Shown here piece after piece: positions 3-22,811 of a DNA stretch of 64,000 nt (position 1 is the stretch's first letter; the number at the start of each line of letters is the position of its first letter). The notes under the pieces are model-generated. The model searched no databases and was not told the origin of the DNA. It worked only from the letters and a program-made list of their open reading frames with translations. The position numbers and the translations under genes are program-made. The stretch lies in IMG/VR virus record IMGVR_UViG_3300042889_001272, positions 124,001 to 188,000 of that record; one strand, 5' to 3'.

Positions 3-794
3 ACTTCCTTTGCGTTTAAAAAAGACAATATTGTCGACTCTACGGAAATCACAACCGTGAATGAAACAGGTCTGGACGCAATGGCAGGCGATGGTGGATA
101 CCAAGAAGCGTATCTCGGTGATCATCTTCGATTTAAGATGAAACGTGAGGGCAAACGTTTTTGGGCAGGCGATAACATCAGCGATTACCTGCACGAAGGC
201 GATATAGAAAAACTAATCGACGAAGCAACTCCAGCATTTGAACAAGTGCTAGATAGTTTGCTAATTGATCGTGAGAATGATCCTAACAGTAAAGGTACTG
301 CAAGACGACTTGCTAAAATGTACTTTAATGAAATTATGGCAGGAAGATATGAACAAGCTCCAGACGCAACAGCATTTCCAAATGATTCGGCAGACCGTTA
401 TGAAGGCATGCTCGTGGTTCGCAGTGAACTTCGTAGTATGTGTAGTCATCATCACCAACCCGTTACTGGGGTTGCTTATATTGGCATTATCGCGGCAGAG
501 AAACTGATCGGTCTTAGCAAGTACACTCGTATCGCACAATGGTGTGCTAGGCGTGGTACTTTACAAGAAGAACTTTGCAATGACATTGCCCGTGAGATTA
601 GCAAAGCTACTGATTCGGAAAACGTAGCTGTGTATATCCAGGCTGTTCATGGATGCTGTGAGAATAGGGGTATTATGGCACATAGCAGTTTGACTCAAAC
701 TACTGTACTTAAAGGATTCTTTAAAGAAGATCCGGGTGCAAAGAAAGAATTCTTTGATAATATTAAACTACAACAGGAGTTTGCACCAAGATGA
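3..794 (+). CDS. folE: GTP cyclohydrolase I (5' partial; frame is open to the window edge)
   Basis: Motifs RSMCSHHHQP, GLSKYTRIAQWCARR, QEEL, HGCCENRG; no stop in frame upstream of the GTG at 57. Confidence 0.95.
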   Translation, partial: TSFAFKKDNIVDSTEITTVNETGLDAMAGDGGYQEAYLGDHLRFKMKREGKRFWAGDNISDYLHEGDIEKLIDEATPAFEQVLDSLLIDRENDPNSKGTARRLAKMYFNEIMAGRYEQAPDATAFPNDSADRYEGMLVVRSELRSMCSHHHQPVTGVAYIGIIAAEKLIGLSKYTRIAQWCARRGTLQEELCNDIAREISKATDSENVAVYIQAVHGCCENRGIMAHSSLTQTTVLKGFFKEDPGAKKEFFDNIKLQQEFAPR

Positions 795-2726: not shown

Positions 2727-3067
2727 TGAAAGCACAACAACCGGCAAAAGGTATAATGTTTGATGCTGATTATGGCAATAGTAAATCATATACTATTGCC
2801 TGCGATTGCCATGATGGAGATCATCAGGTTCATATGTGGATTGAACTTAATGGCGAAGAAGATACCAAGGACGTAGAAATGACTTTCTACGTTAATACTA
2901 CAACACCTTTCTGGAAACCGGGATTCAGCAGAGTCAAAGCCGCTTGGAATATATTAATCAAGGGCTACAGAGAAGATCAACATACATTGATTTTAAACAA
3001 ACAGGCAGCATTGAATGTTGCCAATACTATTAATCAAGTAGTAGAAGAATTACAAGGAAAAAAATGA
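2714..3067 (+). CDS. hypothetical protein
   Basis: About 110 aa ORF overlapping queE stop and metK start. Confidence 0.7.
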   Translation: MGQVMKAQQPAKGIMFDADYGNSKSYTIACDCHDGDHQVHMWIELNGEEDTKDVEMTFYVNTTTPFWKPGFSRVKAAWNILIKGYREDQHTLILNKQAALNVANTINQVVEELQGKK

Positions 3068-4164
3068 GTTATTTGTTTACCAGCGAGAGTGTGTCAGAGG
3101 GACATCCGGATAAAATTGCAGATGCTATCAGTGATGCGATTTTAGATTTAGTAATGGCCAAAGAGGATCTTAGTCTTCGGTGCGCTTGCGAAACATTAGT
3201 AACTACTAATCGTGTTGTTCTTGCAGGAGAATACAAAGGTATTTTAGACAACGTAGAAGTAGAAAACGCAGTAAGAAAAGTTATTAAAGATGTGGGCTAC
3301 GAACAAACAGGATTTGATTGGCGTACTGTTGAAATTACTAATTTACTACACGGACAAAGTGCCGACATTGCATTAGGTACAGATAACTTTGGCGCAGGCG
3401 ATCAAGGCTTAATGTTTGGTTATGCTTGTAATGAAACTGATAACTATATGCCCAGCGCAATTTATTGGAGTCATGAGATCCTTCGGCACTTAACCGATGC
3501 TCGTAAAAATGGTGTTGTAAATTGGTTAGGACCTGATGCAAAAAGTCAAGTAACATTTGAATACAATGACGATGGCACTCTAAAGCGTATTGCCAAAGTT
3601 GTTTGTAGTACACAGCACAGTGATTCAGTGGGTATCGAAACAGTTCGCAAAATTGTAACTACACTTATTCGCAATGTACTACCAGGTAAGTATATCGATG
3701 AACATACTGAATTCTTTATTAACCCTACTGGTCGATTTGTTATTGGTGGTCCTGATGGTGACACTGGTCTCACAGGACGAAAAATCATCGTCGACACCTA
3801 CGGCGGTTATAGCCCTCACGGTGGTGGTGCTTTTAGCGGCAAAGATCCTACTAAAGTAGATCGTAGTGCCGCATATATGATGCGATACATTGCTAAGAAT
3901 ATTGTCGCTAGCGGTAAGTCATCTTGGGCTAATGTACAGATTAGCTATGCTATTGGGCTTGCTGAGCCAATGAGCTTCTATGTTGAATGTGACGACATTG
4001 ATGTTGCTCGTGAACTAACCGTTTCTATTCCTAGTTTAGTAGATTTAACTCCAAAAGGTATCATTGAACGATTTAACTTGTTCCGTCCTATCTATAGTAG
4101 CACAACCAACTATGGTCACTTTGGTAAAGATTATTTGCCATGGGAAAAGATCGACTTGTTCTAA
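3064..4164 (+). CDS. metK: S-adenosylmethionine synthetase
   Basis: FTSESVSEGHPDK, GAGDQGLMFGYA, GGPDGDTGLTGRKIIVDTYGG, GGGAFSGKDPTKVDRSAAY, YGHFG. Confidence 0.98.
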   Translation: MSYLFTSESVSEGHPDKIADAISDAILDLVMAKEDLSLRCACETLVTTNRVVLAGEYKGILDNVEVENAVRKVIKDVGYEQTGFDWRTVEITNLLHGQSADIALGTDNFGAGDQGLMFGYACNETDNYMPSAIYWSHEILRHLTDARKNGVVNWLGPDAKSQVTFEYNDDGTLKRIAKVVCSTQHSDSVGIETVRKIVTTLIRNVLPGKYIDEHTEFFINPTGRFVIGGPDGDTGLTGRKIIVDTYGGYSPHGGGAFSGKDPTKVDRSAAYMMRYIAKNIVASGKSSWANVQISYAIGLAEPMSFYVECDDIDVARELTVSIPSLVDLTPKGIIERFNLFRPIYSSTTNYGHFGKDYLPWEKIDLF

Positions 4165-5709: not shown

Positions 5710-6179
5710 TTTTAGCAAAAAGTGTAATTAAAGATAAGTTTTGGATTCTTGAAGAGAATGCCAAACGGGTTGGCATGATGAACTTCAAAGATAATAATTA
5801 TACTATTAATCTTAAACGTAAAGACTTAGTAGTTCAAAGTGAGGACGAACTTAAGAATATGGGCATTGAGTTTGTTGTTCGCGACTTAACACATGGTGGT
5901 CATCTTGAGGTCATGGGTTATCCAACGGATCAAGAAGAAGTCTTTAATGTAAAAGACATTGACGGATTTCCAACATTTACTAAAAAAGCAGAAAGTAAAA
6001 GCATCCATGTTGCAGGTTGGTATGGCTTAAAGTTTAAAAATGGTTGGTGTACTAGTTTATGTCCCAGATTATCTACTGTTAAGACCAATGTATATGCGGG
6101 ACCGTTTAAAACTAAAATGGATCTAAAAGTTGTTTTAGGACAGAAAAAAGACGTAATTTTAAACGAAGACGATAGTTAA
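5706..6179 (+). CDS. hypothetical protein
   Basis: 157 aa, ATGA overlap with exonuclease. Confidence 0.75.
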   Translation: MILAKSVIKDKFWILEENAKRVGMMNFKDNNYTINLKRKDLVVQSEDELKNMGIEFVVRDLTHGGHLEVMGYPTDQEEVFNVKDIDGFPTFTKKAESKSIHVAGWYGLKFKNGWCTSLCPRLSTVKTNVYAGPFKTKMDLKVVLGQKKDVILNEDDS

Positions 6180-6201
6180 AATAGTATATAACCTGTTTTC
6201 T

Positions 6202-6209
6202 GATAAATA
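6202..6209 (+). promoter_or_regulatory. T4-like late promoter GATAAATA
   Basis: Intergenic, upstream of GGAG RBS and ORF 6229; motif recurs before several genes. Confidence 0.55.
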
Positions 6210-6228
6210 ATATATTGGAGAACAGTAA

Positions 6229-6546
6229 ATGGCAAGACCTAAACCTACTATATTATTAACACACGTGGATCCTAGCTCATATAAGAGCGAAGAAATATTA
6301 GAAGCTGATGCTATCTATGCAGTATTCTATCAAGGAAATCCGTTTAATCTTCGTACGTTTTTAAACAGCTTACAAGACTACCCCGGACCTAAATACAAGA
6401 AGGTTAGCTTCTCTAATCCAGGTCATGCGTTTAATCTAATGGAAAAAATGAACAAGTTGTTCAAGTGTTCAGACTTTACTGTAGTAGAATTAAAAGAAGG
6501 GTCTTTAGTCAATGAATCAGACCTTATCAAAAAAGCAGTTAAGTGA
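6229..6546 (+). CDS. conserved large-phage hypothetical protein
   Basis: MARPKPTILL...GPKYKKVSFSNPGHAFNL; GGAG RBS. Confidence 0.8.
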   Translation: MARPKPTILLTHVDPSSYKSEEILEADAIYAVFYQGNPFNLRTFLNSLQDYPGPKYKKVSFSNPGHAFNLMEKMNKLFKCSDFTVVELKEGSLVNESDLIKKAVK

Positions 6547-6853
6547 AGCAATCTTTGAACAACTTAAAAAGTCTGTTGGTCGAGACTTAGAGTTCTTTCA
6601 AATATTCAAAAACGTCAAAGGTACTAGATTTACCAGTACAGGTTTTGAACTGGCTAAAATCCTATGGCGAGTGTATCCAATAAAGTTCAAACAAGAATAT
6701 AGAGTATTAAACAAGACTCTACTGTTGTTAGACGAACGCATGGATTGGCCATATTACCTGAGCAAACGTCAATTGGTATTGTTCAGCGAAATGGATGCGT
6801 TCGAGTTTACATTATATTCAGGAGATATAAATTTATGGTCCAACAAATTATAA
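6512..6853 (+). CDS. hypothetical protein
   Basis: 113 aa ORF overlapping the previous gene. Confidence 0.7.
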   Translation: MNQTLSKKQLSEAIFEQLKKSVGRDLEFFQIFKNVKGTRFTSTGFELAKILWRVYPIKFKQEYRVLNKTLLLLDERMDWPYYLSKRQLVLFSEMDAFEFTLYSGDINLWSNKL

Positions 6854-6861
6854 ATTATAAA

Positions 6862-7209
6862 TTATACAATTTCAACTTCGACTGTAGTTGCGTGGCCATG
6901 AATAGCATTGTACTCATCACGAGCTTCTTTAAATAAAGGCATCCCAGCTTCTACAGCTCTGGCATCGTTTTCGGCGAAAAGTTCATCTCTGCCCATAGGT
7001 GATGTAAAGATATGAGTAACTGTCATCGTTAAACCATCAACTGACTCAGTTCTATCAAATGAAATTATTGCATTTGGTTCATCTGGACTTTTGGGACGTG
7101 CAGTTTTTGCAGCGACCATTTGCTCTTGATATACTTGTCCTACCGCTGTATTGATAAAAAAAGGCGCATTTGCAGTTGGTCTTACAGTAGTGAGTGAGAA
7201 TTTGAACAT
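6862..7209 (-). CDS. hypothetical protein, probably late-expressed
   Basis: 115 aa; AGGAG RBS; GATAAATA on - strand at 7236-7243. Confidence 0.75.
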   Translation of the reverse strand: MFKFSLTTVRPTANAPFFINTAVGQVYQEQMVAAKTARPKSPDEPNAIISFDRTESVDGLTMTVTHIFTSPMGRDELFAENDARAVEAGMPLFKEARDEYNAIHGHATTVEVEIV

Positions 7210-7315
7210 AATTGTCTCCTAGAATATGTTTACTTTATTTATCTTTAAATTTATTTTTTTAGCATTTTCAATGGCTTTTTCGTATCGAATTGTTAATAAC
7301 TTGAATATTGACAAA

Positions 7316-8230
7316 CTATTTTTTAAGCAATTTAGTTACAATTTCCTTCCAATATTGTCTTTCATTAATATACCAATCGTTGTATTTTGCTACTGAAAGA
7401 GTAGTTGGTGTAATTAAATCCTTTTGATATGCTTCTAATGCTTTGCTACTAGCTGTAGACTTTGCTAAAATTTTATTAATTTCGTTATATTTGTCAACGG
7501 GCATTTCGTTAGATGCAAATACAGCATAATTAGCTACTAACTTATCAACTCCAGATATGCCTTGTTTAGTTAAGAGTAGACCTTTAAACTCTTCTAAATC
7601 TCGAACACCAGTATATCCAATTACTGAAACCTCTTTAGCATCAATCACGGGTTTAGCATCTATGACAAAGGTTACTGCGGCATCCACATGCCCGCCTGCA
7701 GCCGCTATTGTAGCATCGATCATACCTTTAAAATTTACAATGACTAAGTTAGGATTCTTTTCTTTAAGGACATTGGCCAGCATATCAGATAAGCTGCCTA
7801 TGCCACTAATGCCTATGCTTGGATTAGGTTGCTGAAGTAACTCGTTTATATTTTTATATTTTTTGCTAACTACAGCTAAAGGTGCGCCTCCACCTTGCAC
7901 TAATACTGGCTTAAATTTATCTAAGTCATGGATACCTGTCGTTTCTACTGCCGGTCTAATAAAGAAACTAGAACTCATCCCCACTACGGTATTATTCGGA
8001 TTCTGTAACACATGATTGGCAGCAATGCTACCGCCTGCGCCTGATTTAGATTCGATAATGAAATTGTATTTTGATTGAGACTTATTGGCATCTTCTGCAA
8101 TGTGTCTTAATGTTATTGCTTGATTTGAGCCAATGCTAAATCCCCATAGTATAGAAATAGTTTCGGCTGCTGAAGCTGCTGTTGCAGTTGCTAATGTGAC
8201 AATTGCCACGATTGTTTTAAATGTTTTCAT
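7316..8230 (-). CDS. Bug/TctC-family tripartite tricarboxylate transporter substrate-binding protein
   Basis: Signal peptide (..ATAASAA), ESKSGAGGSIAA (cf. NRPGAGG), FKGMIDATIAAAGGHVD, about 300 aa periplasmic-binding size. Confidence 0.8.
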   Translation of the reverse strand: MKTFKTIVAIVTLATATAASAAETISILWGFSIGSNQAITLRHIAEDANKSQSKYNFIIESKSGAGGSIAANHVLQNPNNTVVGMSSSFFIRPAVETTGIHDLDKFKPVLVQGGGAPLAVVSKKYKNINELLQQPNPSIGISGIGSLSDMLANVLKEKNPNLVIVNFKGMIDATIAAAGGHVDAAVTFVIDAKPVIDAKEVSVIGYTGVRDLEEFKGLLLTKQGISGVDKLVANYAVFASNEMPVDKYNEINKILAKSTASSKALEAYQKDLITPTTLSVAKYNDWYINERQYWKEIVTKLLKK

Positions 8231-9377
8231 TCATGTTTCCTATAAAATATTTATTTGAAAAAGTTGTAAGGCCGCTAACTACCCCATCACGCTTGCCTGC
8301 CACAACATAGTTTTTTGCATTCTCTGCAACATAATTTATGCCTTCTTGCCATATTTGAAACTCAGGAGTGTTGTTGTACAGTGAAAAAAACCAGTCATCA
8401 AATTCATTGTTCCAATCTTTTGTAGACTTATCTGCTTGATACCAAGAATCATTCCACGTCGAGTATATAATTTTTCTATACATTCTTTCGTGTATCAGTC
8501 GGTGTTTTGTAAACAGATCTACCAAATCAACAGGGCTCCACAGTGGTTGATATTGGGGATATACTCTTAACCATTTTTTAATAACATGCGCCTGCTTGCA
8601 TATTATTGGCAATGCGCTTGGGTCCCAATAAAAATACTCAACTGTAGCGTTATCATATTCAGACAAATGGTCACTTGCACTAGCAATATTAGCACTCTTA
8701 TCGCTGAATAGTACATAGAATTTATTCTTTTCTATGTAAGTTCTAGGCTTTTCTATTCCTAATATTACACATATGCTCTTACTACGATCGAATTGATTTC
8801 TTACTTCTTTAAAATATGTGTAATTGTAACGAGTTGCACCACTAACATTTAATGGCTCACGACTAGTTTCTACCCATGACGCATTTCCTGCTTTTCTCAA
8901 AGTATCAAAAACATTATCGCTTAAATCTAATACAGTAATTTTAGTTTTAGGACTTTGATCTTTTATATATTGTAACCTGCCAATAGTTTGTAATTCAAAT
9001 TCTGCGCCTGCATTCCAACTTCCTCGAATACTAGTATCTAATACAGTTAAGCGATTAGCTTTGGACATGTGATTAACAACTACTTCATCAATTAACAGAC
9101 CTTGCCGCAAAAATGATTCTAATATGTTGTGACTATCGCTACCTGCACTATAGCTTAAAATAACATAATCGTATTTCTCACGAATTTCTCTAGATCGTCG
9201 GTCATACAGTTGATCCAGTGTTTCTTCCGGCTCTATAGTCCAATCAAATCTGTCAAATTCTTCGTTATTAAAATGCCAATTTAATGGTTTATTTACTTGA
9301 GAAGAATATACACACGCTTTAATCTTAGAATCAAATTCTAAATTGTTACACGAATAGTATCCCAGTTTTTTGTTCAT
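8217..9377 (-). CDS. PP-loop (adenine nucleotide alpha hydrolase-like) enzyme, paralog 1
   Basis: ILSYSAGSDSHNIL PP-loop motif; extensive similarity to 9429-10592. Confidence 0.7.
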   Translation of the reverse strand: MNKKLGYYSCNNLEFDSKIKACVYSSQVNKPLNWHFNNEEFDRFDWTIEPEETLDQLYDRRSREIREKYDYVILSYSAGSDSHNILESFLRQGLLIDEVVVNHMSKANRLTVLDTSIRGSWNAGAEFELQTIGRLQYIKDQSPKTKITVLDLSDNVFDTLRKAGNASWVETSREPLNVSGATRYNYTYFKEVRNQFDRSKSICVILGIEKPRTYIEKNKFYVLFSDKSANIASASDHLSEYDNATVEYFYWDPSALPIICKQAHVIKKWLRVYPQYQPLWSPVDLVDLFTKHRLIHERMYRKIIYSTWNDSWYQADKSTKDWNNEFDDWFFSLYNNTPEFQIWQEGINYVAENAKNYVVAGKRDGVVSGLTTFSNKYFIGNMNENI

Positions 9378-9428
9378 TTATAATTAAATTTCCTATATAG
9401 TATTTTTTTGACAGAGTTATGTATATAT

Positions 9429-10592
9429 TTATTCTGTCAATCCTGCTAGCAGGCCTGCGTCATAGTATTTTCTAAATCGTTTTAATCCATCCCCGCTTTC
9501 GAGAACATAGTTCGATAATTTAGAACTTACATAATCCACGCCTTCTTGCCAAACATTAACTGCTTTTGAATTAGAGTATCCATCTTTAAACCAAATATCA
9601 AATTCACTATACCAATCAGACGTTGATTTATCTGCTTGCCAGTAAGATGCATCCCATGTGCTGTACAATAAACTTCTCAATATTGGTTCATGAATTAGCC
9701 TCGAGACTTGATAGGTATTATTTTCTAGATGCCAAAATTTTTGCATCTCTGGATTGGCGCTTAGATATTTTTTAATAACATGACATTGCTTAATCAACAA
9801 AGGCACACAATCTGGACTCCAGTAAAAAAATTCAGCTGTACTGTTATTATAATCTGTTAAATGTTCTGAAACAGTTTGTTGGTTTGCCGACCTATCAATG
9901 AAATTCATTATCACATGATCTTTATAAGGACCTTTTGTGGGAATTATTATTTTAGGTTTTTCGACACCTATAATCATACACACGCTTTTTTCTTTGTCAA
10001 ATCTTTTACGGACTTCAGTGAGATACAAATAGTTAAATCGGGTTGCACCAGCTGGGTTCAGCCCTTCCCTTTTACTAAGAATCCAACTAGCATCTCCGGT
10101 GTTCTCCATTAATCCAAAGAGATGATCGCTCATGTCTGCCAAGGTAATTTTTGTTTTGGGTATTTTAGGTGAAATCTCTTTTAATCTAGGCAAGGTCTGT
10201 AGATAATGTTCAGCATTGGCATTCTTTGCGTCTTTATTTGCTGGATTTAAATCGACGAATTTTCCAGCTGCTTTTTCAAAATGGTTAACAAGTATTTCAT
10301 CAATGTGTAGCCCTTGGCGCACAAAGCTCATTAAAATATTGTGACTATCGGCGCCGCCGCTGTAACTTAATATAACATAATCATATTCATTTCTTAATTG
10401 TCTTGCTCGGCGATTATATAACTCATCTAATGTTTCTTCTGGTTCTATTTTCCAATTATATGATTTAAAAATTTCATCATTGAACATCCATTCGGCAGGT
10501 ACATTTACTTCATTGCTATATAATAATGCTTTTATCTTAGATGAGAATTCTTGCCCGTTGCATACGTAGTATCCTAAATTTTTGTTTATCAT
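9429..10592 (-). CDS. PP-loop (adenine nucleotide alpha hydrolase-like) enzyme, paralog 2
   Basis: ILSYSGGADSHNIL; shared blocks EPEETLDxLY, GLxIDE, GxEKP, EYFYW, YSTW...YQADKST.DW..EFD. Confidence 0.72.
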   Translation of the reverse strand: MINKNLGYYVCNGQEFSSKIKALLYSNEVNVPAEWMFNDEIFKSYNWKIEPEETLDELYNRRARQLRNEYDYVILSYSGGADSHNILMSFVRQGLHIDEILVNHFEKAAGKFVDLNPANKDAKNANAEHYLQTLPRLKEISPKIPKTKITLADMSDHLFGLMENTGDASWILSKREGLNPAGATRFNYLYLTEVRKRFDKEKSVCMIIGVEKPKIIIPTKGPYKDHVIMNFIDRSANQQTVSEHLTDYNNSTAEFFYWSPDCVPLLIKQCHVIKKYLSANPEMQKFWHLENNTYQVSRLIHEPILRSLLYSTWDASYWQADKSTSDWYSEFDIWFKDGYSNSKAVNVWQEGVDYVSSKLSNYVLESGDGLKRFRKYYDAGLLAGLTE

Positions 10593-10664
10593 TGACAGTA
10601 CCTGGTAAATAACTTTATAATTTATTTAGTAAACAAAAATGAAATTTGTATTTAAAAACGGCAG

Positions 10665-11414
10665 ATGTTAAATACTACTATGAACAAACAACAGCTCAAT
10701 GAATTGTTTTGTGGTATTGGCTACAAGGTTTTCAAAGATGTAGTAGATCCTGCTATTATCGACAAGATTAATAAAAAAACTGAATTGCTAGTTCCACATC
10801 GTGGCCATGCCATGGACCACAAATACTACACTGCTGATAAAGTAGCAGAATGTAAAGACTTGGCTGTTTGGTGGAGCCAAGAACTAAGTGGATGGCCTGA
10901 AGTTCAAGAAGTTACTCGTCAACTCATCAATACCGTCGGAATACTTTTTGACGAACCCGATTCATATATTGCAGACATTATTACCAATGAACCAGGTAAT
11001 ACACATATTAAACCGCATATAGACAGTCCGTATCGTTTTCCCAAATGGTGGAACGAAGATGAATTATTAGGTATACAATGTATTCTACCACTGTGTGAAT
11101 TTACATCCAAGAATGGCGGCACCGGCTTATTGCCAAACAGTCACAATACTCGCTGGGTGGTCAAAGATAGTTATGCTGGAAAATATAATGAAGAATTTTT
11201 GGCAGGAGTCGAACAGCCCAAAATGAGTCCGGGCGATGCGTTAATTTACCATCCTCGCACTCTTCACAGCACAATGCCAAATAACACTGATGTTTCACGC
11301 AGAGCATTACTTGTTCATATCACAAGTAAAGAAATGGCGAGACTGTTACAAGCAGAAGATACAATTTGGCAAGAAGAATCAAAAAAGATGTCATCTATGT
11401 CAACGAAATACTGA
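10665..11414 (+). CDS. phytanoyl-CoA dioxygenase (PhyH)-family 2OG-Fe(II) oxygenase
   Basis: HID...HST facial triad, NGGTGLLPNSH, PGDALIYH, RRALL. Confidence 0.85.
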   Translation: MLNTTMNKQQLNELFCGIGYKVFKDVVDPAIIDKINKKTELLVPHRGHAMDHKYYTADKVAECKDLAVWWSQELSGWPEVQEVTRQLINTVGILFDEPDSYIADIITNEPGNTHIKPHIDSPYRFPKWWNEDELLGIQCILPLCEFTSKNGGTGLLPNSHNTRWVVKDSYAGKYNEEFLAGVEQPKMSPGDALIYHPRTLHSTMPNNTDVSRRALLVHITSKEMARLLQAEDTIWQEESKKMSSMSTKY

Positions 11415-11482: not shown

Positions 11483-11773
11483 ATGAAAAATCTTATCGCT
11501 ACCTTAATCGTTGCATTTGCCGCAACATCCGCTTTTGCTCAAACACCTGCTAAGGTTGAAGAAGTTAAGAAGCCTACTGCCGCTACAGCAGCCGCACCCG
11601 TACCTGCTACACCAAAGGAAATGCCTAAGGTAGAAAAGCCAAAGACAAAAGCTGAAAAAGAAGCTGAAGCAAAGGCAAAGGCAGCTAAACCAGCAGACAC
11701 TAAAAGTGCTACACCTGCTGCCAAAGCAGACGAAAAGGCTGTTGCTAAACCTGCCACAGCACCTACTAAGTAA
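11483..11773 (+). CDS. secreted/periplasmic Ala-Lys-Pro-rich low-complexity protein
   Basis: Signal peptide MKNLIATLIVAFAATSAFA; AAGGA RBS. Confidence 0.8.
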   Translation: MKNLIATLIVAFAATSAFAQTPAKVEEVKKPTAATAAAPVPATPKEMPKVEKPKTKAEKEAEAKAKAAKPADTKSATPAAKADEKAVAKPATAPTK

Positions 11774-14938: not shown

Positions 14939-16054
14939 ATGGCAAAAGTAAATAAAGGCGGAGTAGGTGAACCCCGTACAGTAAAGATCACAGAAGCAAA
15001 GCGTCTCGTTCGCCATGCTATGAAGAAAAAGCGTCCAGTGTTCCTGTGGGGTCCTCCAGGCGTTGGTAAATCCGACCTTGCCGCTCAGTTGGCAGATGAA
15101 ATGGGCGGCGCACTTATTGACGTCCGTTTGAACTTGTGGGAACCTACAGACATTAAAGGTATCCCTTATTATAACGCAAAAGAAAATGTAATGAGCTGGG
15201 CCCCTCCAGCAGAACTGCCTACTAAAGAATTTGCCTCCAAGCATCCTGTAGTAGTGCTATTCCTAGACGAGCTCGCAGGTGCGGCTCCTGCTGTACAGGC
15301 CGCGGCTTACCAACTTATCCTTAACCGCAAGGTAGGCACATATGAACTGCCAGACAATGTAGTTATTATGGCGGCAGGTAACCGCATGACAGATAAAGGT
15401 GTTACTTATCGTATGCCTACTCCATTGGCTAACCGCTTTGTTCACTTTGAACTTCGCGTAGACTTTGCAGACTGGAACGTTTGGGCACTGCAAAATCGTA
15501 TCCATCCAGACGTGGTAGGTTACTTGAACTACCAAAAAGCAGACTTGTACAACTTTGATCCTACAGTACATGACCGTAGTTTTGCAACTCCACGTACTTG
15601 GATGTTCGTCAGCGACTTGCTCGACGACGACATGACAGACAACGAGCAGACAGATACTGTAGCAGGTTGCGTTGGTGAAGGTCTTGCAATTAAGTTTATG
15701 GCGCATCGTAAGATTGCCGCAGACTTGCCAACTCCTGCAGATGTATTGTCAGGTAAGGTTAAAGAATTGAAGACTAAAGAAATTAGTGCTATGTATTCTT
15801 TGACAACTGGTATGTGCTACGAGCTCAAAGACGGTTACGAGAACGCTAAGAAGAGTGGCAAGCTAGATACATGGCACACTAACTGTGAGAACTTTATCCA
15901 GTTTATGATGGATAATTTTGAGGCAGAGATGGTTATTATGGGTGCCCATACAGCACTTAAGAATTACAACTTGCCATTTGACCACAAGAAGCTCAAGAAC
16001 TTTCCAGACTTCTTCAAACGCTATGCTCACTTGGTAGTGGATGTCAGCAATTGA
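14939..16054 (+). CDS. MoxR-like AAA+ ATPase
   Basis: Walker A GPPGVGKS, Walker B VVLFLDE, AAGNR, LANRF, TPRTW; AGGAG RBS. Confidence 0.9.
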   Translation: MAKVNKGGVGEPRTVKITEAKRLVRHAMKKKRPVFLWGPPGVGKSDLAAQLADEMGGALIDVRLNLWEPTDIKGIPYYNAKENVMSWAPPAELPTKEFASKHPVVVLFLDELAGAAPAVQAAAYQLILNRKVGTYELPDNVVIMAAGNRMTDKGVTYRMPTPLANRFVHFELRVDFADWNVWALQNRIHPDVVGYLNYQKADLYNFDPTVHDRSFATPRTWMFVSDLLDDDMTDNEQTDTVAGCVGEGLAIKFMAHRKIAADLPTPADVLSGKVKELKTKEISAMYSLTTGMCYELKDGYENAKKSGKLDTWHTNCENFIQFMMDNFEAEMVIMGAHTALKNYNLPFDHKKLKNFPDFFKRYAHLVVDVSN

Positions 16055-16406
16055 CATTGAAGACGAGCTCAAGGCTCACTTGGAGTATATGACTATAGAC
16101 AAGGAAAGGGGTATCCCTTTCCGGTCTGAAATGTTGGAATTGATCTACGGCAATATGGATTATGTTAGAAGTGTGTTTGGACCAGGCGAACTTACACGAG
16201 ACAGTATCATTGACTATTTCGACCTTGCAAGGACTACTTGGTCAGAGATAGACTACACAGATGGTCGAACAAGAAACGAGTTAATCAAATGGTGCAGGTC
16301 GATGAGTATCAAACCCTTGCATTACTATGCGCCATTGGGTACCAAGATCATTTGGTTTAAAGAACCAGAGTCAGCTTTTCTTTGCCGTTTAAAATTTGGT
16401 CTTTAA
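16041..16406 (+). CDS. hypothetical protein between the AAA and VWA genes
   Basis: 121 aa ORF. Confidence 0.65.
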   Translation: MSAIDIEDELKAHLEYMTIDKERGIPFRSEMLELIYGNMDYVRSVFGPGELTRDSIIDYFDLARTTWSEIDYTDGRTRNELIKWCRSMSIKPLHYYAPLGTKIIWFKEPESAFLCRLKFGL

Positions 16407-16435
16407 TTGACATTAAATAAGTTTAAGTGTATAAT
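16407..16435 (+). promoter_or_regulatory. early sigma70 promoter
   Basis: TTGACA-N17-TATAAT abutting the preceding TAA. Confidence 0.88.
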
Positions 16436-16455
16436 AGATACATACAGGAGCAAAT

Positions 16456-17649
16456 ATGAAATTCACAACAAAAGATAGACTTACTAAAGCCCGTGTTAAG
16501 ATGTTGCTTAAACATCCATTTTGGGGTAACTTGGCAACCCGTCTTAAAATGGTAGAGAACAGTGACTGGCTGACAACTGCCGCTACAGATGGTCGCCACT
16601 TTTACTATTGTGAAAAGTTTATTGAAAGTCTAGACGACGAAGAACTAGTTTTCTTGTTTGGACACGAAGTCGGACACATTGTCTATGACCACATGGGACG
16701 TCGTGGAGATAGAGATCCTCAGTTATGGAACATGGCCGGTGACTATCTTATCAACGATATGCTTATCCAAAACAATGTAGGCAAAAAGATTACCAAGGTG
16801 CCAATCCTTTGGGATCCTAAATTCCGCGACATGACAGCAGAAGAAGTCTATGACGACTTGTTTAAGAACGCTGTTAAAATCCAAGTTACTTTGGACATGC
16901 ACATGGACGGTTCTGGTGAAGAAGGCGAAGAAGGCAAAGGCAGTGACGGCAAGAGTAAGTCCAGTGGCATTAAGATTGACGAAGAAACTGCCAAGAAGAT
17001 GCGTGACGAGATGAAAGAAGCTATCCTGCAAAGTGCCCAAGCGGCAGGTGCAGGTAACGTTCCATCAGGTATCAAACGTCTTATTAACCAGTTTACTGCT
17101 CCTAAGATGCGTTGGCAAGACCTGTTGCGTATCCAATTAGAATCTAGTTTGAAAAATAACTATAGTTTTATGCGTCCCAGCCGTAAGGCTTGGCATACCG
17201 GTGCAGTATTGCCCGGCATGTTGCCAGCAGAAGAATTGGATATTGTAGTTGCCATCGACATGTCGGGCAGTATTAGCAATGAGATGGCACAGGATTTCTT
17301 GTCAGAAGTCAGAGGCATGATGGATTTGTATAATAGTTACAAAATCCATGTATTCTGTTTTGACACAGAAGTGTACAATCCCGTAACGTTCAGCGATGAC
17401 TACGGCGATGACATCGCTACATATGAAACAATGGGCGGTGGTGGCACAGACTTTGACGCTTGCTGGCGTTATATGAAGGAAGAAGATATTAATCCCAAAC
17501 AGTTTATTATGTTTACAGACGGATATCCATACGACAGTTGGGGTGACGAAAACTACTGCGACACGTTATTTGTTGTGCATGGTAATGAACAGATAGAAGC
17601 ACCGTTTGGCGTTACAGCACATTATACTTTTGACAACGAAACCGTTTAA
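16456..17649 (+). CDS. HExxH metallopeptidase-like plus VWA-domain protein (DUF2201-type partner of MoxR AAA)
   Basis: TAATDG, HEVGH, WNMAGDYLIN, MIDAS DMSGS, GGGGTDF, FTDG. Confidence 0.88.
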   Translation: MKFTTKDRLTKARVKMLLKHPFWGNLATRLKMVENSDWLTTAATDGRHFYYCEKFIESLDDEELVFLFGHEVGHIVYDHMGRRGDRDPQLWNMAGDYLINDMLIQNNVGKKITKVPILWDPKFRDMTAEEVYDDLFKNAVKIQVTLDMHMDGSGEEGEEGKGSDGKSKSSGIKIDEETAKKMRDEMKEAILQSAQAAGAGNVPSGIKRLINQFTAPKMRWQDLLRIQLESSLKNNYSFMRPSRKAWHTGAVLPGMLPAEELDIVVAIDMSGSISNEMAQDFLSEVRGMMDLYNSYKIHVFCFDTEVYNPVTFSDDYGDDIATYETMGGGGTDFDACWRYMKEEDINPKQFIMFTDGYPYDSWGDENYCDTLFVVHGNEQIEAPFGVTAHYTFDNETV

Positions 17650-18951: not shown

Positions 18952-19296
18952 ATGTTCATACTCATGTCAATAAAACCTGCTTGCCTTAATAAAACAACAA
19001 GCCCATTTGTGAAATCAGACGGGTCACTTCTTCCATGTTGTTGGGCAAGTACTAGTTCTGACACTATTAAATTTCTAGGCAAAGAAAAATATTCACAATT
19101 AAATTTATATCATCATACTGTTGATGAAATTTATTCATCTGATGCTTATAAATTAATAAAATCAAAAATATTAGGCGAAAATCCTTTTGATATATGCAAA
19201 CAGTGGTGTAATGTGTTGCGGCGATCACAGCGACAAGACTACTTCATAGATTCATCGGAAATAGATGACTACATTAATAAGTATATTACTTTATAA
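18952..19296 (+). CDS. stand-alone SPASM/twitch-type Fe-S domain protein
   Basis: C-x8-VKSDGSLLPCCW...NL....DEI...CKQWC; ACTAAATA motif at 18932-18939. Confidence 0.7.
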   Translation: MFILMSIKPACLNKTTSPFVKSDGSLLPCCWASTSSDTIKFLGKEKYSQLNLYHHTVDEIYSSDAYKLIKSKILGENPFDICKQWCNVLRRSQRQDYFIDSSEIDDYINKYITL

Positions 19297-19300
19297 TTTT

Positions 19301-19972
19301 ATGTATAAATTAAAGACCCAAGTAATAGAATTAGAACTAACTTCAAAATGCACACTGCTATGCCCTGAATGTGCTAGAACCATGGATAAAGAAGAAACTA
19401 AAAACAAATGGAATTTTGGTGAGTTAGATATAGAAATTATAGAAAAATTGGCCAGCCAAACTCCTTACATAAGAACATTTAATTTTTGTGGTGGTTACGG
19501 TGATCCAATTTATCATAGCAGACTATTTGATATAATTGATATTTGCCATCGTTATAATAAATCAATTCACATAGAAACTGCGGGCAATCTTAGAAGCAAA
19601 GAATGGTGGAATAAATTGTCATTAATCCTCGGTGAACGCGATTCTATTTGTTTCAGTGTAGACGGATTAAAACATAGTAATCACATTTACAGAATAAATT
19701 CCAATTGGGATAGCATATTGAATGCCATGACTATCATGAGTGAATCATCATGCCATACGAAATGGAAATGGATATTGTTCAAATCTAATCAAGATGATGT
19801 TTTGGAAGGTTACAAATTAAGCAAGAAACTTGGTATTAAAAAATTTGAGCTAGTGGAAAGCGGTAGAATAACTCCGGGGAATGAGCCTACTAAATCAGTA
19901 AAGCAGATTTTAGCAGAGTTAAGAGAATATAACGAAACACAAGGACTTGACAACTATATTATTTTAAAGTAA
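19301..19972 (+). CDS. radical SAM protein (core only; likely start 19301)
   Basis: CTLLCPEC, CGGYGDP, IETAG, FSVDG, KWKWILF. Confidence 0.88.
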   Translation: MYKLKTQVIELELTSKCTLLCPECARTMDKEETKNKWNFGELDIEIIEKLASQTPYIRTFNFCGGYGDPIYHSRLFDIIDICHRYNKSIHIETAGNLRSKEWWNKLSLILGERDSICFSVDGLKHSNHIYRINSNWDSILNAMTIMSESSCHTKWKWILFKSNQDDVLEGYKLSKKLGIKKFELVESGRITPGNEPTKSVKQILAELREYNETQGLDNYIILK

Positions 19973-19997: not shown

Positions 19998-20882
19998 ATG
20001 ACACTAAGAACAGAAATTAATTTTGAAACAGATAAGAACTATCTTCCAGTATTGGATCATGGTTTTGTAGGTCTTGTTGACTACATGGGCAGTGATAGCG
20101 CCATCGTTCAAGCCGCTCGTGTTAGTTATGGTGCTGGGACAAAACAAGTTCAAGATGATAGAAACCTAATCCGGTATCTAATGCGTCACGAACATACTAC
20201 ACCTTTTGAAATGTGTGAGGTAAAGTTCCACATTAAACTTCCTATCTTCGTTATGCGACAGTTGGTACGTCATCGTACTGCCAGCATGAACGAATACAGT
20301 GCTCGTTATAGTGTGCTTACAGATGAGTTTTACATTCCCGAACTAGAACAAATCCAAAAGCAAAGCACAAGTAACAAACAAGGGCGTGAAGATGCCGAGT
20401 GGGGCTTTGAAGAAAAGCGTGGCGTTCAACATGCCTTCCAACGTAGCTTTCATAATGCATACAAAGAATATGCAAGTTTGCTAGGTAAGGAAGATTCTGG
20501 ACTAGCACGTGAGTTGGCTAGAAGTGTGCTTCCGGTAGGCGGATATACAGAATTGTATTGGAAAGCCAACTTGAAGAACTTTTTACACATGGCTCGCTTG
20601 CGTATGGATCCACATGCACAATGGGAGATCCGTGAGTTTGCAGGTGCTATGTATAACTTGGTTAAACCTTTGTTCCCAGAGGCTTGCGTGGCATTCGAGG
20701 ACTACGCTGTTAACTCAGTTAAGTTGAGTACTGGAGAATATCAGCTTGTTAAGAGTTTAATCAGCAAAGAAAAATGGGCTACTATGGTTACAAAATACGG
20801 CAATGACGAAAAAGCCCTGGGACAAGACGTAGGGCTTGGTGCTCGTGAACTCAAAGAGTTTAAAGAAAAATTAGGCTTGTAA
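19998..20882 (+). CDS. thyX: FAD-dependent thymidylate synthase
   Basis: AARVSY, HTTPFE, RQLVRHRTASMNEYSARY, ARSVLP, HAQWEIR. Confidence 0.97.
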   Translation: MTLRTEINFETDKNYLPVLDHGFVGLVDYMGSDSAIVQAARVSYGAGTKQVQDDRNLIRYLMRHEHTTPFEMCEVKFHIKLPIFVMRQLVRHRTASMNEYSARYSVLTDEFYIPELEQIQKQSTSNKQGREDAEWGFEEKRGVQHAFQRSFHNAYKEYASLLGKEDSGLARELARSVLPVGGYTELYWKANLKNFLHMARLRMDPHAQWEIREFAGAMYNLVKPLFPEACVAFEDYAVNSVKLSTGEYQLVKSLISKEKWATMVTKYGNDEKALGQDVGLGARELKEFKEKLGL

Positions 20883-21425
20883 AGGATCAACGCTGATTTC
20901 ATTTATATGAAACTCAGCGGGTTGTTCTAAAATCCATTTAATATAACTAGCCGCACCCTGAATAGGAATTGTTTTCCTGTCAGGGTGTTTTGCTTGTACA
21001 TTACTTAAACTGCCAAAGCTAATTAATGTGACTCTGGGGTTCTTTGCCCAGACTCCGGACATGCCTAGACTATTAGCGTAATCGCGCAATGCTTTCTTTT
21101 CAGCATTATAAAGCCAATCTGTGGCTTTCATCACTCTGTCAGTAGTACTACCTATACAAATAATCAAAGTTTGTTTGCCTGCTAGTTTAAGTTTCTTGTA
21201 TACCGCTTCGAGTAGCAAAACTTGATTAAACTTCCATAATGCACTATTAATAATTACTGCATCATAATCAACACTCATCTCGGCAAATACTTGTTGATTC
21301 TCTGCTTTAGTTAAATCTAAATCATGAGTTGTTCTACTTACAAATGTTAATTCATGTTGTGTTAACTCTAAATTTAGTGCCTCTGCTAGACCAAAATCTG
21401 GATTACCTGATATTAATATTTTCAT
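20871..21425 (-). CDS. short-chain dehydrogenase/reductase-like protein
   Basis: ILISG..FGLA Rossmann start, IINSA, IGS, YxxxK (YNAEK). Confidence 0.7.
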   Translation of the reverse strand: MKILISGNPDFGLAEALNLELTQHELTFVSRTTHDLDLTKAENQQVFAEMSVDYDAVIINSALWKFNQVLLLEAVYKKLKLAGKQTLIICIGSTTDRVMKATDWLYNAEKKALRDYANSLGMSGVWAKNPRVTLISFGSLSNVQAKHPDRKTIPIQGAASYIKWILEQPAEFHINEISVDPLQA

Positions 21426-22588
21426 AAGAATGTTGTATCTCCTGGGAACAAAGGTAATTTAGTGCCTGGCGCACGTTTTGGAATCTTACTGTCAGCACTA
21501 CTCACACAACTTGTTCCGCCACAGGGCATTGGTTTATCGTATAACTTGAAGCCGGTTTCGATATGTCCTAATGGAACTTCACTACAACTGTAACTACGTT
21601 TTACTGTGCCATCTGGTTCGCGGATAATAATACTTCGATAGCCACTGCTACACTCCCAACCATTGAAGTTGTTAAAGTTGAATGCGTTAAAACGTTCTGC
21701 CTGATCCATGAACCATGGATTTCCTTCTTTATCAACAAATTCGATTTGATAATGAGGGTCAACATCGACTTGTTTTTTACGACTAGGATCGGCTCTATCA
21801 ATTATAAAAGTAGGTTTTGGACGTTGAACAAGGCCTGCGGCTAATGCTTTTTCTTCTGTGTAAGCACGTTGTGGCATACCATTGTGTAACTTAGCCAACA
21901 TCTCGGGTGTATAACCATCTACTACACGGCTTGCTGTGGGATCGCTTTGTGGCTTGAGTGTAACGTTAATACCTCTATTATGAAAGTATAAACTTAGATC
22001 ATAAATCTCGTTGAACTGCTCTGGAACCATGACCATGTTGATAGTAATCTGAGTGTCATATTCTTGACACAAGACTAACTTGTCAGCAAACTCTTCAACC
22101 TTCTTATCAGTGTCGACGTGTTCACGATGACAACTTGCTGTGATACTAGCACGATGGAAGTGCTTGACTGCTGGTACATACTTTTCTTCAAACCATTTAA
22201 TCGGTCGACTCATGTTACTGGTCATATGTACACTAGTATAGTTTGTGTTAGCCGCATCATTGTTTAAGTGATTAAGGATATCAATGTACGCAGGATGGAA
22301 TGTGGGTTCTCCGCCACTTAAACTAAAGTGGAAACTATTAAATCCATTTTCTCTTGCTTGACGTTTGATCTCGTCCACAGTATGCAACATCAAAGGAGTG
22401 GGACGATGATCTTTAGTATCACTGCGAGCATAAGGCCAGCAATAACTGCAACGATAGTTACAGTAGCGTCCTAGTAGCCACGATACGGTAAACATATCGC
22501 GGTATAGCATTGTTCTTTGTCCAACTCTAACTAGATCCTTAAACGGAATCTTAGTAAAGTCATAATCACTGGTTTTTAAATCACTCAT
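21422..22588 (-). CDS. radical SAM protein with C-terminal SPASM/twitch
   Basis: CNYRCSYC, SGGEP, TSN; WECSSG...DG...C...CVSSAD. Confidence 0.92.
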   Translation of the reverse strand: MSDLKTSDYDFTKIPFKDLVRVGQRTMLYRDMFTVSWLLGRYCNYRCSYCWPYARSDTKDHRPTPLMLHTVDEIKRQARENGFNSFHFSLSGGEPTFHPAYIDILNHLNNDAANTNYTSVHMTSNMSRPIKWFEEKYVPAVKHFHRASITASCHREHVDTDKKVEEFADKLVLCQEYDTQITINMVMVPEQFNEIYDLSLYFHNRGINVTLKPQSDPTASRVVDGYTPEMLAKLHNGMPQRAYTEEKALAAGLVQRPKPTFIIDRADPSRKKQVDVDPHYQIEFVDKEGNPWFMDQAERFNAFNFNNFNGWECSSGYRSIIIREPDGTVKRSYSCSEVPLGHIETGFKLYDKPMPCGGTSCVSSADSKIPKRAPGTKLPLFPGDTTFL

Positions 22589-22811
22589 TTTGTTCGTAGA
22601 TAAATTTTACGTCCTTGCCCGGACCGACTTCGCTGGGCATGCCACCGTATTGCTTGACATACCATTCTATGGCTGCGATGTACCAACCTTGACTGTTATG
22701 TCTACTTTCTTTGTTAAAAATATATATATTGTCGTTGGTTGCTGGCATCGTACTTATAATGCGGGCCGCTTCTAATTGTAATTTGCGTAATGGAAGATCT
22801 TGTATATTCAT
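22581..22811 (-). CDS. hypothetical protein
   Basis: 76 aa, overlaps both neighbours. Confidence 0.65.
   Translation of the reverse strand: MNIQDLPLRKLQLEAARIISTMPATNDNIYIFNKESRHNSQGWYIAAIEWYVKQYGGMPSEVGPGKDVKFIYEQNE

What the first reader, a model, noticed from the sequence alone, without database searches (positions are those of the whole stretch)
6862..11414. Island: Bug/TctC binding protein, two paralogous PP-loop ATPases, divergent PhyH dioxygenase and a small late protein
Seen: a - strand unit (PP-loop, PP-loop, TctC, 115-aa ORF) with nnTAAATA motifs at 10623-10630 and 7236-7243, and a divergent 2OG-Fe(II) oxygenase. There are no TctA/TctB membrane subunits here. Known: PP-loop enzymes adenylate a carboxyl or carbonyl group for amide, lactam or thio transfer, and Bug/TctC proteins bind carboxylates and are expanded in Betaproteobacteria. 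Inference: an uncharacterised small pathway that captures a carboxylate, hydroxylates it and ligates it, or a periplasmic protein that hijacks host TctAB. Also a host clue.
Basis: partly seen in the sequence, partly recalled or inferred. Interest (0 to 1): 0.62.

Follow-up and report, generated by a model that had tools for sequence, protein, structure and literature searches.

The report
Phage ligase and binding-protein gene pair
A giant freshwater phage carries two copies of an unannotated, virus-only ATP-using enzyme next to a secreted nutrient-binding protein, and this pairing recurs and co-diversifies across many uncultured phages, which suggests a phage-run "capture and activate" route for an unidentified small molecule.

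Summary
The window is part of a 235.6-kb virus record, an incomplete freshwater jumbo phage whose relatives reach about 350 kb.

- **PP-loop genes:** The two genes are 49% identical. They belong to a large, virus-restricted family (1,890 clusters at 50% identity) with no Pfam, PHROG or NCBIfam model. A confident model has a PP-loop fold that best matches the synthetase domain of asparagine synthetase B and beta-lactam synthetase. There is no glutaminase domain.
- **TctC gene:** It is a secreted Bug/TctC binding protein of a viral clade.
- **Linkage:** The PP-loop/TctC linkage is conserved. In 20 of the 25 dereplicated loci that hold a TctC, it abuts a PP-loop gene (4.5 expected by shuffling). 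Each TctC clade pairs with its own PP-loop clade. Four independently sampled TctC contigs also carry PP-loop genes.
- **115-aa ORF:** It has an ABM (dimeric alpha/beta-barrel) fold and belongs to a small family that recurs in these islands.
- **PhyH:** It is not part of the unit. It has its own perfect sigma-70-type promoter, lies on the opposite strand, and is linked in only 2 of 55 locus groups.
- **Late-promoter motif:** It is at chance level.

Most likely mechanism (inferred): the binding protein hijacks host TctAB to import a solute, probably a carboxylate, which the cognate PP-loop enzyme adenylates and amidates or ligates. The substrate is unknown.

The parts
9429..10592 (-). PP-loop ATPase paralog A (387 aa), of the 'PPA clade' that elsewhere pairs with canonical (T2) TctC
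   Evidence: SGGADS motif. AF2 model pLDDT 84.4, pTM 0.87. Best structural matches: AsnB 1ct9 Z 10.7 over 280 residues, human ASNS Z 9.7, beta-lactam synthetase Z 8.9, TsnB9 Z 8.8, carbapenam synthetase Z 8.7. 851 word-search homologs, none named. Tree placement.
8217..9377 (-). PP-loop ATPase paralog B (386 aa), the cognate partner of the adjacent T1 TctC
   Evidence: 49% identical to A. SAGSDS variant of the PP-loop. Keeps every family-invariant residue (K19, Y59, R67, Y70, Y72, S78, G80, D82, F90, D98, E128, D153, G209, K212, Y310 in PPA numbering). Its stop overlaps the TctC start by 14 nt. Its clade is always next to T1 TctC.
7316..8230 (-). Secreted TctC/Bug-family solute-binding protein, viral clade T1
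   Evidence: PF03401 at 28.7 bits. Family profile against PDB TTT binding proteins, E 1e-49. Sec-type signal peptide ending ASA|AE. First carboxylate 'pincer' motif replaced (WGFSIGSNQ instead of APGGPSD), second retained as GIGSLSD. 91 relatives, nearest clusters viral.
6862..7209 (-). 115-aa ABM / dimeric alpha-beta-barrel fold protein, of a ~100-aa family that recurs in these islands
   Evidence: hhalign against family c11: 98.4%, E 4e-15. The c11 profile hits IsdI/IsdG at E 3e-4. AF2 pLDDT 93.4. Foldseek hits Rv0793, ABM monooxygenases, LsrG, MhuD and polyketide cyclases, E 3e-5, probability 1.0.
10623..10630 (-). ACTAAATA string upstream of PP-loop A (possible promoter element, unproven)
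   Evidence: Read directly. Only weak enrichment of ATAAATA/TAAATA upstream of genes. TATAAATA is under-represented.
7236..7243 (-). GATAAATA string in the 106-nt gap before the 115-aa ORF, followed by an AGGAG ribosome-binding site
   Evidence: Same caveat as for the other string.
10592..10621 (+). Perfect sigma-70-type promoter (TTGACA-N18-TATAAT) driving PhyH; marks the border of the cassette
   Evidence: 12 of 12 matches. TTGACAC and GTATAAT are among the most enriched upstream words in this genome.
10665..11414 (+). PhyH-family 2OG/Fe(II) oxygenase: a neighbour, not a module member; the true start is probably 10680
   Evidence: PF05721 at E 4e-16. H118-x-D120 triad. 190 relatives of 240-245 aa on phage contigs up to 357 kb. 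Present in 2 of 55 PP-centred locus groups.

Best explanation
Positions 6862-10592 are a minus-strand accessory cassette set inside a plus-strand gene block of an uncultured freshwater jumbo phage. Its core is a conserved two-gene module. One gene is a cytoplasmic PP-loop ATPase from a large virus-only family built like the synthetase half of asparagine synthetase B or beta-lactam synthetase. The other is a cognate, Sec-exported TctC/Bug-type solute-binding protein. Proposed mechanism: during infection the phage binding protein is exported to the periplasm, captures a small solute (most likely a carboxylate), and delivers it to the host's own TctA/TctB permease. In the cytoplasm the matching PP-loop enzyme adenylates that carboxyl group (ATP to AMP + PPi) and transfers it to ammonia or an amine, or closes a ring. 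The ABM-fold protein here, and the FabK/NMO-type FMN enzymes and a second PP-loop family in relatives, would carry out further tailoring. The window holds the complete PPB-TctC(T1) pair. It also holds PPA, whose usual partner, a canonical T2 TctC, is present in near-identical phages but deleted here. Shown: gene anatomy, folds, export signal, conserved adjacency, paralog-specific pairing. Inferred: transport through host TctAB, a shared ligand, the chemistry and the substrate.
For: Fold: model pLDDT 84. AsnB-type synthetase domains are the top hits over 260-280 residues at Z 8.7-10.7; generic PP-loop domains match 150-190 residues at Z 6-7. Foldseek gives the same families. The PP-loop and a GxD/EKP motif are invariant across paralogs only 23-31% identical to PPA, which suggests active enzymes. 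TctC: family profile E 1e-49 to solved TTT binding proteins. 31 of 32 members pass Pfam. All have signal peptides. Linkage: 25 of 55 dereplicated PP loci hold TctC, and in 20 it directly abuts a PP gene, against 4.5 expected (maximum 12 in 2000 shuffles). Adjacency survives changes of orientation. Each TctC clade sits beside its own PP clade, including three different pairs inside the single locus L025. Mantel r is 0.72, with 0 of 5000 permutations as high. Four of four independently sampled T1-TctC contigs carry PP genes 0-3 genes away. PPB and TctC overlap by 14 nt. No TctA/B in the phage record. Contigs from an RNA library cover parts of TctC and PPA (weak).
Against: No substrate is identified. 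Sequence similarity to AsnB is limited to the PP-loop, and Z 10.7 at rmsd 5.0 A is only moderate. The T1 TctC has lost the canonical first carboxylate-pincer motif, so its ligand may not be a simple carboxylate. 30 of 55 locus groups have a PP gene without TctC within 7 kb, so the enzyme does not require it. Co-diversification of adjacent genes can partly reflect duplication of a two-gene segment and shared ancestry. The host is unknown, so the presence of TctAB is unverified. The RNA-library contigs do not prove transcription.
Confidence: 0.4

Rival explanations
1. There is no functional coupling. The PP-loop genes, TctC and the ABM-fold gene are independent accessory genes that sit together only because they share a hypervariable island inherited and duplicated as blocks.
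For: The surrounding islands are mosaics of unrelated accessory genes: radical SAM, fatty-acid desaturase and hydroxylase, GNAT, GDSL, AhpC, CMD, DSP phosphatase. More than half of the PP loci lack TctC. The second TctC is a presence/absence polymorphism.
Against: Direct adjacency is 20 of 25 against 4.5 expected. It persists through inversions and across PP clades only 25-50% identical. Paralog-specific pairing holds within one genome (L025) and across genomes. The reciprocal sampling gave 4 of 4.
Confidence: 0.2
2. The PP-loop enzymes act on nucleic acid or nucleotides, for example a QueC/TilS/MnmA/GuaA-like base modification of tRNA or phage DNA. TctC would be an unrelated nutrient-uptake gene.
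For: Many PP-loop enzymes modify bases. The genome encodes FolE (window 3-794) and a weak QueD/PTPS homolog but no canonical QueC. The companion PP-loop family c1 gives weak QueC, MnmA and GMP-synthase hits.
Against: No TGT/DpdA transglycosylase is found in the record. The candidate radical SAM at 19265-19972 resembles SPASM maturases, not QueE. QueC, TilS and MnmA score well below AsnB-type enzymes in the structural search (Z 5.3-6.1 against 8.7-10.7). This reading does not explain the paralog-specific pairing with a periplasmic protein.
Confidence: 0.15
3. The PP-loop enzyme acts on, or binds, the TctC protein itself. Examples would be ATP-dependent amidation, lactam formation or tagging before export, as lasso-peptide cyclases (AsnB homologs) or Cap9 do for protein or peptide substrates. 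Enzyme and protein substrate would then co-evolve.
For: Paralog-specific pairing is what enzyme/protein-substrate pairs show. The AsnB superfamily includes peptide-modifying cyclases (own knowledge). Cap9 appears among the structural matches at Z 6.0.
Against: There is no evidence of contact. TctC carries a Sec signal and a full canonical fold. Many PP genes lack TctC. No leader-like peptide or partner protease is seen.
Confidence: 0.1
4. The viral TctC is not a transport component. It would be a periplasmic sensor, decoy or superinfection-exclusion factor, for example one that blocks host TTT uptake or signalling. The PP-loop enzyme would have an unrelated cytoplasmic role.
For: No TctA/B in the phage record. 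The T1 clade has a remodelled binding motif. Orphan Bug proteins with signalling roles are known (own knowledge).
Against: The T2 clade keeps both canonical ligand-binding motifs. This reading also leaves the pairing unexplained.
Confidence: 0.1

Closest known systems
Asparagine synthetase B family synthetase domain (AsnB, beta-lactam synthetase, carbapenam synthetase, TsnB9)
   Same: PP-loop SGGxDS motif. The same overall architecture over about 280 residues, including the helical C-terminal subdomain (Z 8.7-10.7). These enzymes adenylate a substrate carboxylate and form an amide, lactam or hydroxamate.
   Different: No N-terminal Ntn glutaminase domain: only about 50 residues precede the PP-loop domain. 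No detectable sequence similarity beyond the PP-loop. A distinct invariant GxD/EKP motif. Virus-restricted.
Bug/TctC solute-binding proteins of tripartite tricarboxylate transporters (BugD, BugE, Bug27, TphC, AdpC)
   Same: Pfam PF03401, the same length of about 300 aa, a Sec signal, and profile E 1e-49 to 1e-30 to solved members. The 'orphan' situation without adjacent TctAB is typical of Bug proteins.
   Different: Encoded by a phage, in clades that are 96-100% viral. The window's T1 clade replaces the first carboxylate-pincer motif. Systematically paired with a PP-loop enzyme.
Cyanophage PstS (a phage-encoded periplasmic phosphate-binding protein that works with the host PstCAB; own knowledge)
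   Same: The phage supplies only the periplasmic binding component and relies on the host permease.
   Different: Different transporter class (TTT, not ABC). Here the binding protein is coupled to a dedicated cytoplasmic enzyme and has diversified into several paralog pairs.
ABM / dimeric alpha-beta-barrel proteins (Rv0793, ActVA-Orf6-type monooxygenases, IsdG/I, LsrG, polyketide cyclases)
   Same: The fold of the 115-aa protein and a weak profile hit to IsdI/IsdG.
   Different: No Pfam ABM match. No conserved catalytic residues identified. Function untested.

Membership tests
PP-loop ATP pyrophosphatase superfamily | SGGxDS pyrophosphate-binding loop at the end of the first strand of a Rossmann-like alpha/beta domain | tested here: met
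   SGGADS in A and SAGSDS in B. S78, G80 and D82 are invariant across 32 divergent members. The model places the motif between strand 72-77 and helix 81-92. All top structural hits are PP-loop enzymes.
PP-loop ATP pyrophosphatase superfamily | Substrate-dependent cleavage of ATP to AMP + PPi | not testable with these tools
   Needs an enzyme assay.
Asparagine synthetase B / class II amidotransferase family (Pfam PF00733) | Sequence match to the Asn_synthase model | tested here: not met
   No Pfam or NCBIfam hit for either paralog or for 10 further family members. hhalign against E. coli AsnB aligns only 10 columns of the PP-loop.
Asparagine synthetase B / class II amidotransferase family (Pfam PF00733) | N-terminal Ntn glutaminase domain with catalytic Cys at position 2 | tested here: not met
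   The proteins start MINKN / MNKKL, and only about 50 residues precede the PP-loop domain.
Asparagine synthetase B / class II amidotransferase family (Pfam PF00733) | Synthetase-domain architecture (PP-loop domain plus C-terminal helical subdomain) | tested here: met
   1ct9 Z 10.7 with 280 residues aligned. 9b6c, 1jgt, 7ylz and 1q15 at Z 8.7-9.7. The next class of hits aligns 150-190 residues at Z about 7.
TctC/Bug family (PF03401) | HMM match above the gathering score | tested here: met
   28.7 bits against 27 for the window protein. 31 of 32 viral relatives match, best E 5e-26. Profile against the PDB, E 1e-49.
TctC/Bug family (PF03401) | Periplasmic location (signal peptide) | tested here: met
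   N-terminal hydrophobic segment with an AxA site in all 33 distinct viral members, by inspection; no dedicated predictor was run.
TctC/Bug family (PF03401) | Two conserved strand-turn-helix 'pincer' motifs that hold the ligand carboxylate (own knowledge of BugD/BugE structures) | tested here: inconclusive
   The T2 clade has APGGPSD and GYGSSEH. The window's T1 clade has WGFSIGSNQ and GIGSLSD.
Complete tripartite tricarboxylate transporter | TctA and TctB membrane subunits encoded together with TctC | tested here: not met
   No PF01970 or PF07331 match in the 235.6-kb record, which is about 66% complete.
PhyH 2OG/Fe(II) oxygenases (PF05721) | HMM match and the HxD...H iron triad | tested here: met
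   E 4e-16. H118-x-D120 with H196/H201.
ABM / Dabb dimeric alpha-beta barrel | Ferredoxin-like beta-alpha-beta-beta-alpha-beta fold of about 100 residues | tested here: met
   pLDDT 93.4. Foldseek E 3e-5, probability 1.0 to Rv0793 and ABM proteins. Pfam ABM model not matched.
T4-type late promoter | TATAAATA about 10 nt upstream of the transcription start, enriched before late genes | tested here: not met
   The two sites read ACTAAATA and GATAAATA. TATAAATA is found 2 times against 9.2 expected.

The most novel reading that the evidence does not exclude
Phage-encoded binding-protein/ligase pairs form a modular nutrient-piracy system that has diversified by substrate. Each secreted TctC paralog would feed a different solute through the host TTT permease to its own dedicated PP-loop adenylating enzyme. 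This would define a new, very large class of viral auxiliary metabolic modules (more than 1,800 sequence clusters) and a new enzyme family within the AsnB-like branch.
Probability: 0.3. Interest if true: 0.75.

Novelty: new variant of a known kind. Interest (0 to 1): 0.58.

Why it matters
The PP-loop family is one of the larger blocks of viral dark matter seen here. It has 1,890 clusters at 50% identity, is essentially absent from 185,579 species genomes, and has no model in Pfam, PHROGs or NCBIfam. A conserved partnership with a ligand-binding protein gives a practical route to de-orphaning it. The binding protein is soluble and easy to screen for ligands, and its ligand is the prime candidate substrate for the enzyme. 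If confirmed, this would extend the PstS precedent (a phage supplies only the periplasmic component of a host transporter) to TTT systems. It would also show phages coupling uptake to a private activation step, which bears on how jumbo phages rewire metabolism in lakes.

Tried and rejected
- **Family scans of both PP-loop paralogs:** Pfam, PHROGs and NCBIfam gave nothing beyond sub-threshold noise.
- **PDB sequence profile search with A1:** only a spurious 15-bit hit.
- **hhalign against E. coli AsnB:** only the PP-loop aligns.
- **Searches of 50,697 deposited phages:** megablast and tblastn with the region, PPA and TctC gave no match; PhyH gave one weak hit.
- **ESM Atlas by features and by shape:** only unnamed viral clusters.
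- **Fusion clue:** the longer family member P0357 (584 aa) has a C-terminal extension that matches neither Pfam, the c1 family nor TctC.
- **Complex prediction on PPB plus mature TctC:** no verdict (score 0.08, mark 0.34). This is not evidence either way.
- **7-deazaguanine pathway idea:** FolE and a weak QueD homolog are present, but there is no QueC, no TGT, and the candidate radical SAM is not QueE.
- **Asn-supply idea for an AT-rich phage:** Asn is 6.4% of the predicted proteome. This is suggestive at best and was not pursued.
- **Literature searches:** no paper on a phage TctC/PP-loop pairing. Only a tctA domain listed as a putative AMG in SUP05 viruses (PMC6359870).
- **tRNA and repeat scans of the region:** nothing relevant.

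Full report
**Context.** The window is G000:C1:124001-188000 of a linear 235,561-bp IMG/VR virus record estimated to be 66% complete. Relatives of its genes lie on contigs of 345-357 kb, so this is an uncultured jumbo phage of about 350 kb. Near-identical DNA occurs in lake-water and freshwater metagenomes from 24 listed runs, each from a different study; two of them may be the source sample. The window also encodes a FEN/RNase H-type exonuclease, FolE, MetK, ThyX, a carbamoyltransferase and more than a dozen radical SAM/SPASM proteins. Genes up to 6853 and from 10665 to about 20.9 kb run on the + strand. The cassette at 6862-10592 is an inverted, lower-GC (34-35%) insert between them.

**Observation.** All five ORFs are present as described. 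PPB's stop overlaps the TctC start by 14 nt. PPA and PPB are separated by 51 nt. TctC and the 115-aa ORF are separated by 106 nt that contain GATAAATA and an AGGAG site. The two nnTAAATA strings exist but carry little weight. TATAAATA is under-represented (2 against 9.2 expected), and TAAATA is only modestly commoner upstream of genes than on the opposite strand (37 against 20 of 87 regions). A perfect TTGACA-N18-TATAAT promoter at 10592-10621(+) precedes PhyH. TTGACAC and GTATAAT are among the most enriched upstream words in the genome. PhyH is therefore read from a host-type promoter as the first gene of the + strand block.

**The PP-loop proteins.** PPA and PPB are 49% identical. A third paralog, 28% identical, lies at G000:5959-7110. 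None matches Pfam, PHROGs or NCBIfam. The word search found 851 unnamed homologs. An exhaustive profile search found 1,890 cluster representatives (1,001 at E<1e-30), almost all 365-430 aa. Ten of these were scanned and also had no Pfam domain. The family is viral:
- Atlas clusters are 99-100% Viruses.
- A scan of 185,579 species genomes returned a single contig, in a Haliscomenobacter MAG.

An AlphaFold2 model (pLDDT 84.4, pTM 0.87) has a PP-loop alpha/beta core. An exhaustive structural search puts the synthetase domains of E. coli AsnB (Z 10.7, 280 residues, rmsd 5.0), human ASNS (9.7), beta-lactam synthetase (8.9), TsnB9 (8.8) and carbapenam synthetase (8.7) on top. NAD synthetase, LarE, GMP synthetase, TilS and QueC follow at Z 5.7-7.3 over 150-190 residues. 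Foldseek agrees. At sequence level only the PP-loop aligns with AsnB, and there is no glutaminase domain. Across paralogs down to 23% identity the invariant residues are K19, Y59, R67, Y70, Y72, S78, G80, D82, F90, D98, E128, D153, G209, K212 and Y310. That pattern fits an active enzyme. I therefore file the family in the PP-loop superfamily. It works like the AsnB-type carboxylate-adenylating synthetases, but it is not a member of Pfam Asn_synthase.

**TctC.** The window protein barely passes PF03401. It belongs to a viral family whose profile hits TphC, BugD, BugE, Bug27 and AdpC at E 1e-49 to 1e-30, and 31 of 32 members pass Pfam. All 33 distinct members have Sec-type signal peptides. A tree separates a canonical clade T2 (motifs APGGPSD and GYGSSEH) from the window's clade T1 (WGFSIGSNQ and GIGSLSD) and from several smaller clades. 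T1 has 91 metagenomic relatives, and the nearest Atlas clusters are 96-100% viral. It is thus an old viral lineage and a poor host marker. No TctA or TctB is encoded in the record.

**Linkage.** I fetched 78 viral loci centred on PP homologs and clustered all their ORFs.
- After dereplication into 55 groups, 25 contain TctC within 7 kb.
- In 20 of those 25, TctC directly abuts a PP gene. Shuffled gene orders give a mean of 4.5 and a maximum of 12 in 2000 trials.
- Adjacency persists in co-directional, convergent and upstream arrangements.
- The PP tree shows that T2 TctCs sit only beside the PPA clade. T1 sits beside the PPB, L079 and L078/L067 clades. T3 sits beside the L011_8539/L025_10890 clade, and T5 beside L048/L061.
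- Locus L025 alone holds three such pairs.
- Distances of paired genes correlate (Mantel r 0.72, 0 of 5000 permutations as high). This test does not remove shared ancestry.
- As a reciprocal test, four T1-TctC contigs found independently of PP (L085, L087, L088, L090) all carry PP-family genes 0-3 genes away.
- Near-identical phages (L002-L005, 99% PPA) have the order PPA-PPB-TctC(T1)-TctC(T2). The window lacks the T2 gene. A contig from another lake run shows a 1013-nt insertion exactly at 7317/7320. This is a natural presence/absence polymorphism that leaves PPA without its usual partner here.

**Other members and non-members.**
- The 115-aa ORF aligns with a ~100-aa family (c11) found in these islands (hhalign 98.4%, E 4e-15). 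The two together occur in 9 of 55 groups.
- The c11 profile weakly hits IsdI/IsdG. A pLDDT-93 model matches ABM/Dabb proteins.
- The commonest neighbours elsewhere are a second PP-loop family, c1 (35 of 55 groups; related to the PP family only around the PP-loop), and a FabK/NMO-type FMN protein (20 of 55).
- Other recurrent neighbours are DUF2061, radical SAM, fatty-acid desaturase and hydroxylase, GNAT, GDSL, AhpC and CMD genes.
- The own genome has c1 copies at G000:9454-10350 and 121435-122322, and no NMO-type gene in the available 66%.
- PhyH is a well-conserved gene of this phage lineage (190 relatives) but lies beside PP genes in only 2 of 55 groups.

**Mechanism.** The best-supported reading has three steps. 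The secreted binding protein captures a solute and uses the host TctAB. The cognate PP-loop enzyme activates the solute by adenylation and forms an amide or ring. Small redox proteins then tailor it. The chemistry is coherent, because Bug ligands are carboxylates and AsnB-type enzymes adenylate carboxylates. The paralog-specific pairing of a periplasmic and a cytoplasmic protein is most simply explained by a shared ligand. The weak points are the unknown substrate, the altered binding motif of T1, the many PP genes without TctC, and the lack of expression data. Contigs from an RNA library cover parts of TctC and PPA, but they do not prove transcription. The rivals are coincidental linkage, a nucleic-acid substrate, TctC as a protein substrate, and a non-transport role for TctC. 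They are listed with their tests in the Rival explanations section. The 7-deazaguanine idea was checked and is weak. A complex prediction for PPB plus TctC gave no verdict.

**Novelty.** I found no paper describing this pairing. Each component belongs to a known superfamily. The virus-only PP-loop family, the viral TctC clades and their co-diversifying partnership appear undescribed. I rate it a new variant of a known kind, of moderate-to-good interest.

Noticed in passing
window 21422-37100 and 55252-56652 (- strand): A long array of at least twelve radical SAM genes, many with an N-terminal SPASM domain, including an 850-aa double radical SAM protein at 30554-33106. Further related copies run up to genome position about 180.6 kb. 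This is an unusual density for one phage.
   Followed up: partly
window 7317/7320; L002:10357-11268: Presence/absence polymorphism of a second, canonical (T2) TctC gene. It is present in 99%-related phages and as a 1013-nt insertion in a contig of an independent lake run, and absent in the window. The adjacent 115-aa gene is replaced by a 57%-identical allele there.
   Followed up: yes
G000:C1:1400-14100 (outside the window): A second accessory island in the same genome. It holds the third PP-loop paralog (5959-7110), a c1 PP-loop gene (9454-10350), a fatty-acid-desaturase-like gene, a DSP phosphatase and a radical SAM gene. A further c1 copy lies at 121435-122322, just upstream of the window.
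   Followed up: partly
window 11483-11773 (+): A 96-aa protein with a signal peptide and an Ala/Lys/Pro-rich low-complexity body. It is conserved (76-81%) in close relatives. The RNA-library contig overlapping its start had by far the highest depth of the laid contigs (85.7).
   Followed up: no
window 14939-17649 (+): A MoxR-like AAA ATPase followed by a DUF2201 metallopeptidase/VWA protein. The pair is conserved in relatives (clusters c26 and c25).
   Followed up: no
window 3-794, 3064-4164, 19998-20882; G000:46607-47020: FolE, SAM synthetase (MetK), ThyX and a weak QueD/PTPS homolog, but no QueC, QueE or TGT. The FolE product therefore probably feeds something other than a standard 7-deazaguanine DNA modification.
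   Followed up: partly
L084 (NZ_JBBAKG010000090.1, 23.4-kb contig of a Haliscomenobacter MAG): The only hit for the PP-loop family in 185,579 species genomes. The contig also carries a distant PP paralog, a TctC-like gene, and AhpC/CMD genes 82-88% identical to those of the viral loci. It is probably a phage contig binned into the MAG, and possibly a host hint.
   Followed up: partly
related loci, e.g. L016:6183-6998, L048:3989-4432, L045:4556-5452: Fatty-acid-desaturase-like (about 271 aa), fatty-acid-hydroxylase-like (about 147 aa), FabK-like FMN reductase and GDSL lipase genes recur around the PP/TctC module. They hint at a lipid-like or aliphatic carboxylate chemistry.
   Followed up: no
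window 45457-46929 and 49048-50601 (- strand): A carbamoyltransferase (NodU/CmcH type) and a fused nucleotidyltransferase/APH-like kinase lie among the downstream - strand genes. This suggests sugar or small-molecule tailoring.
   Followed up: no
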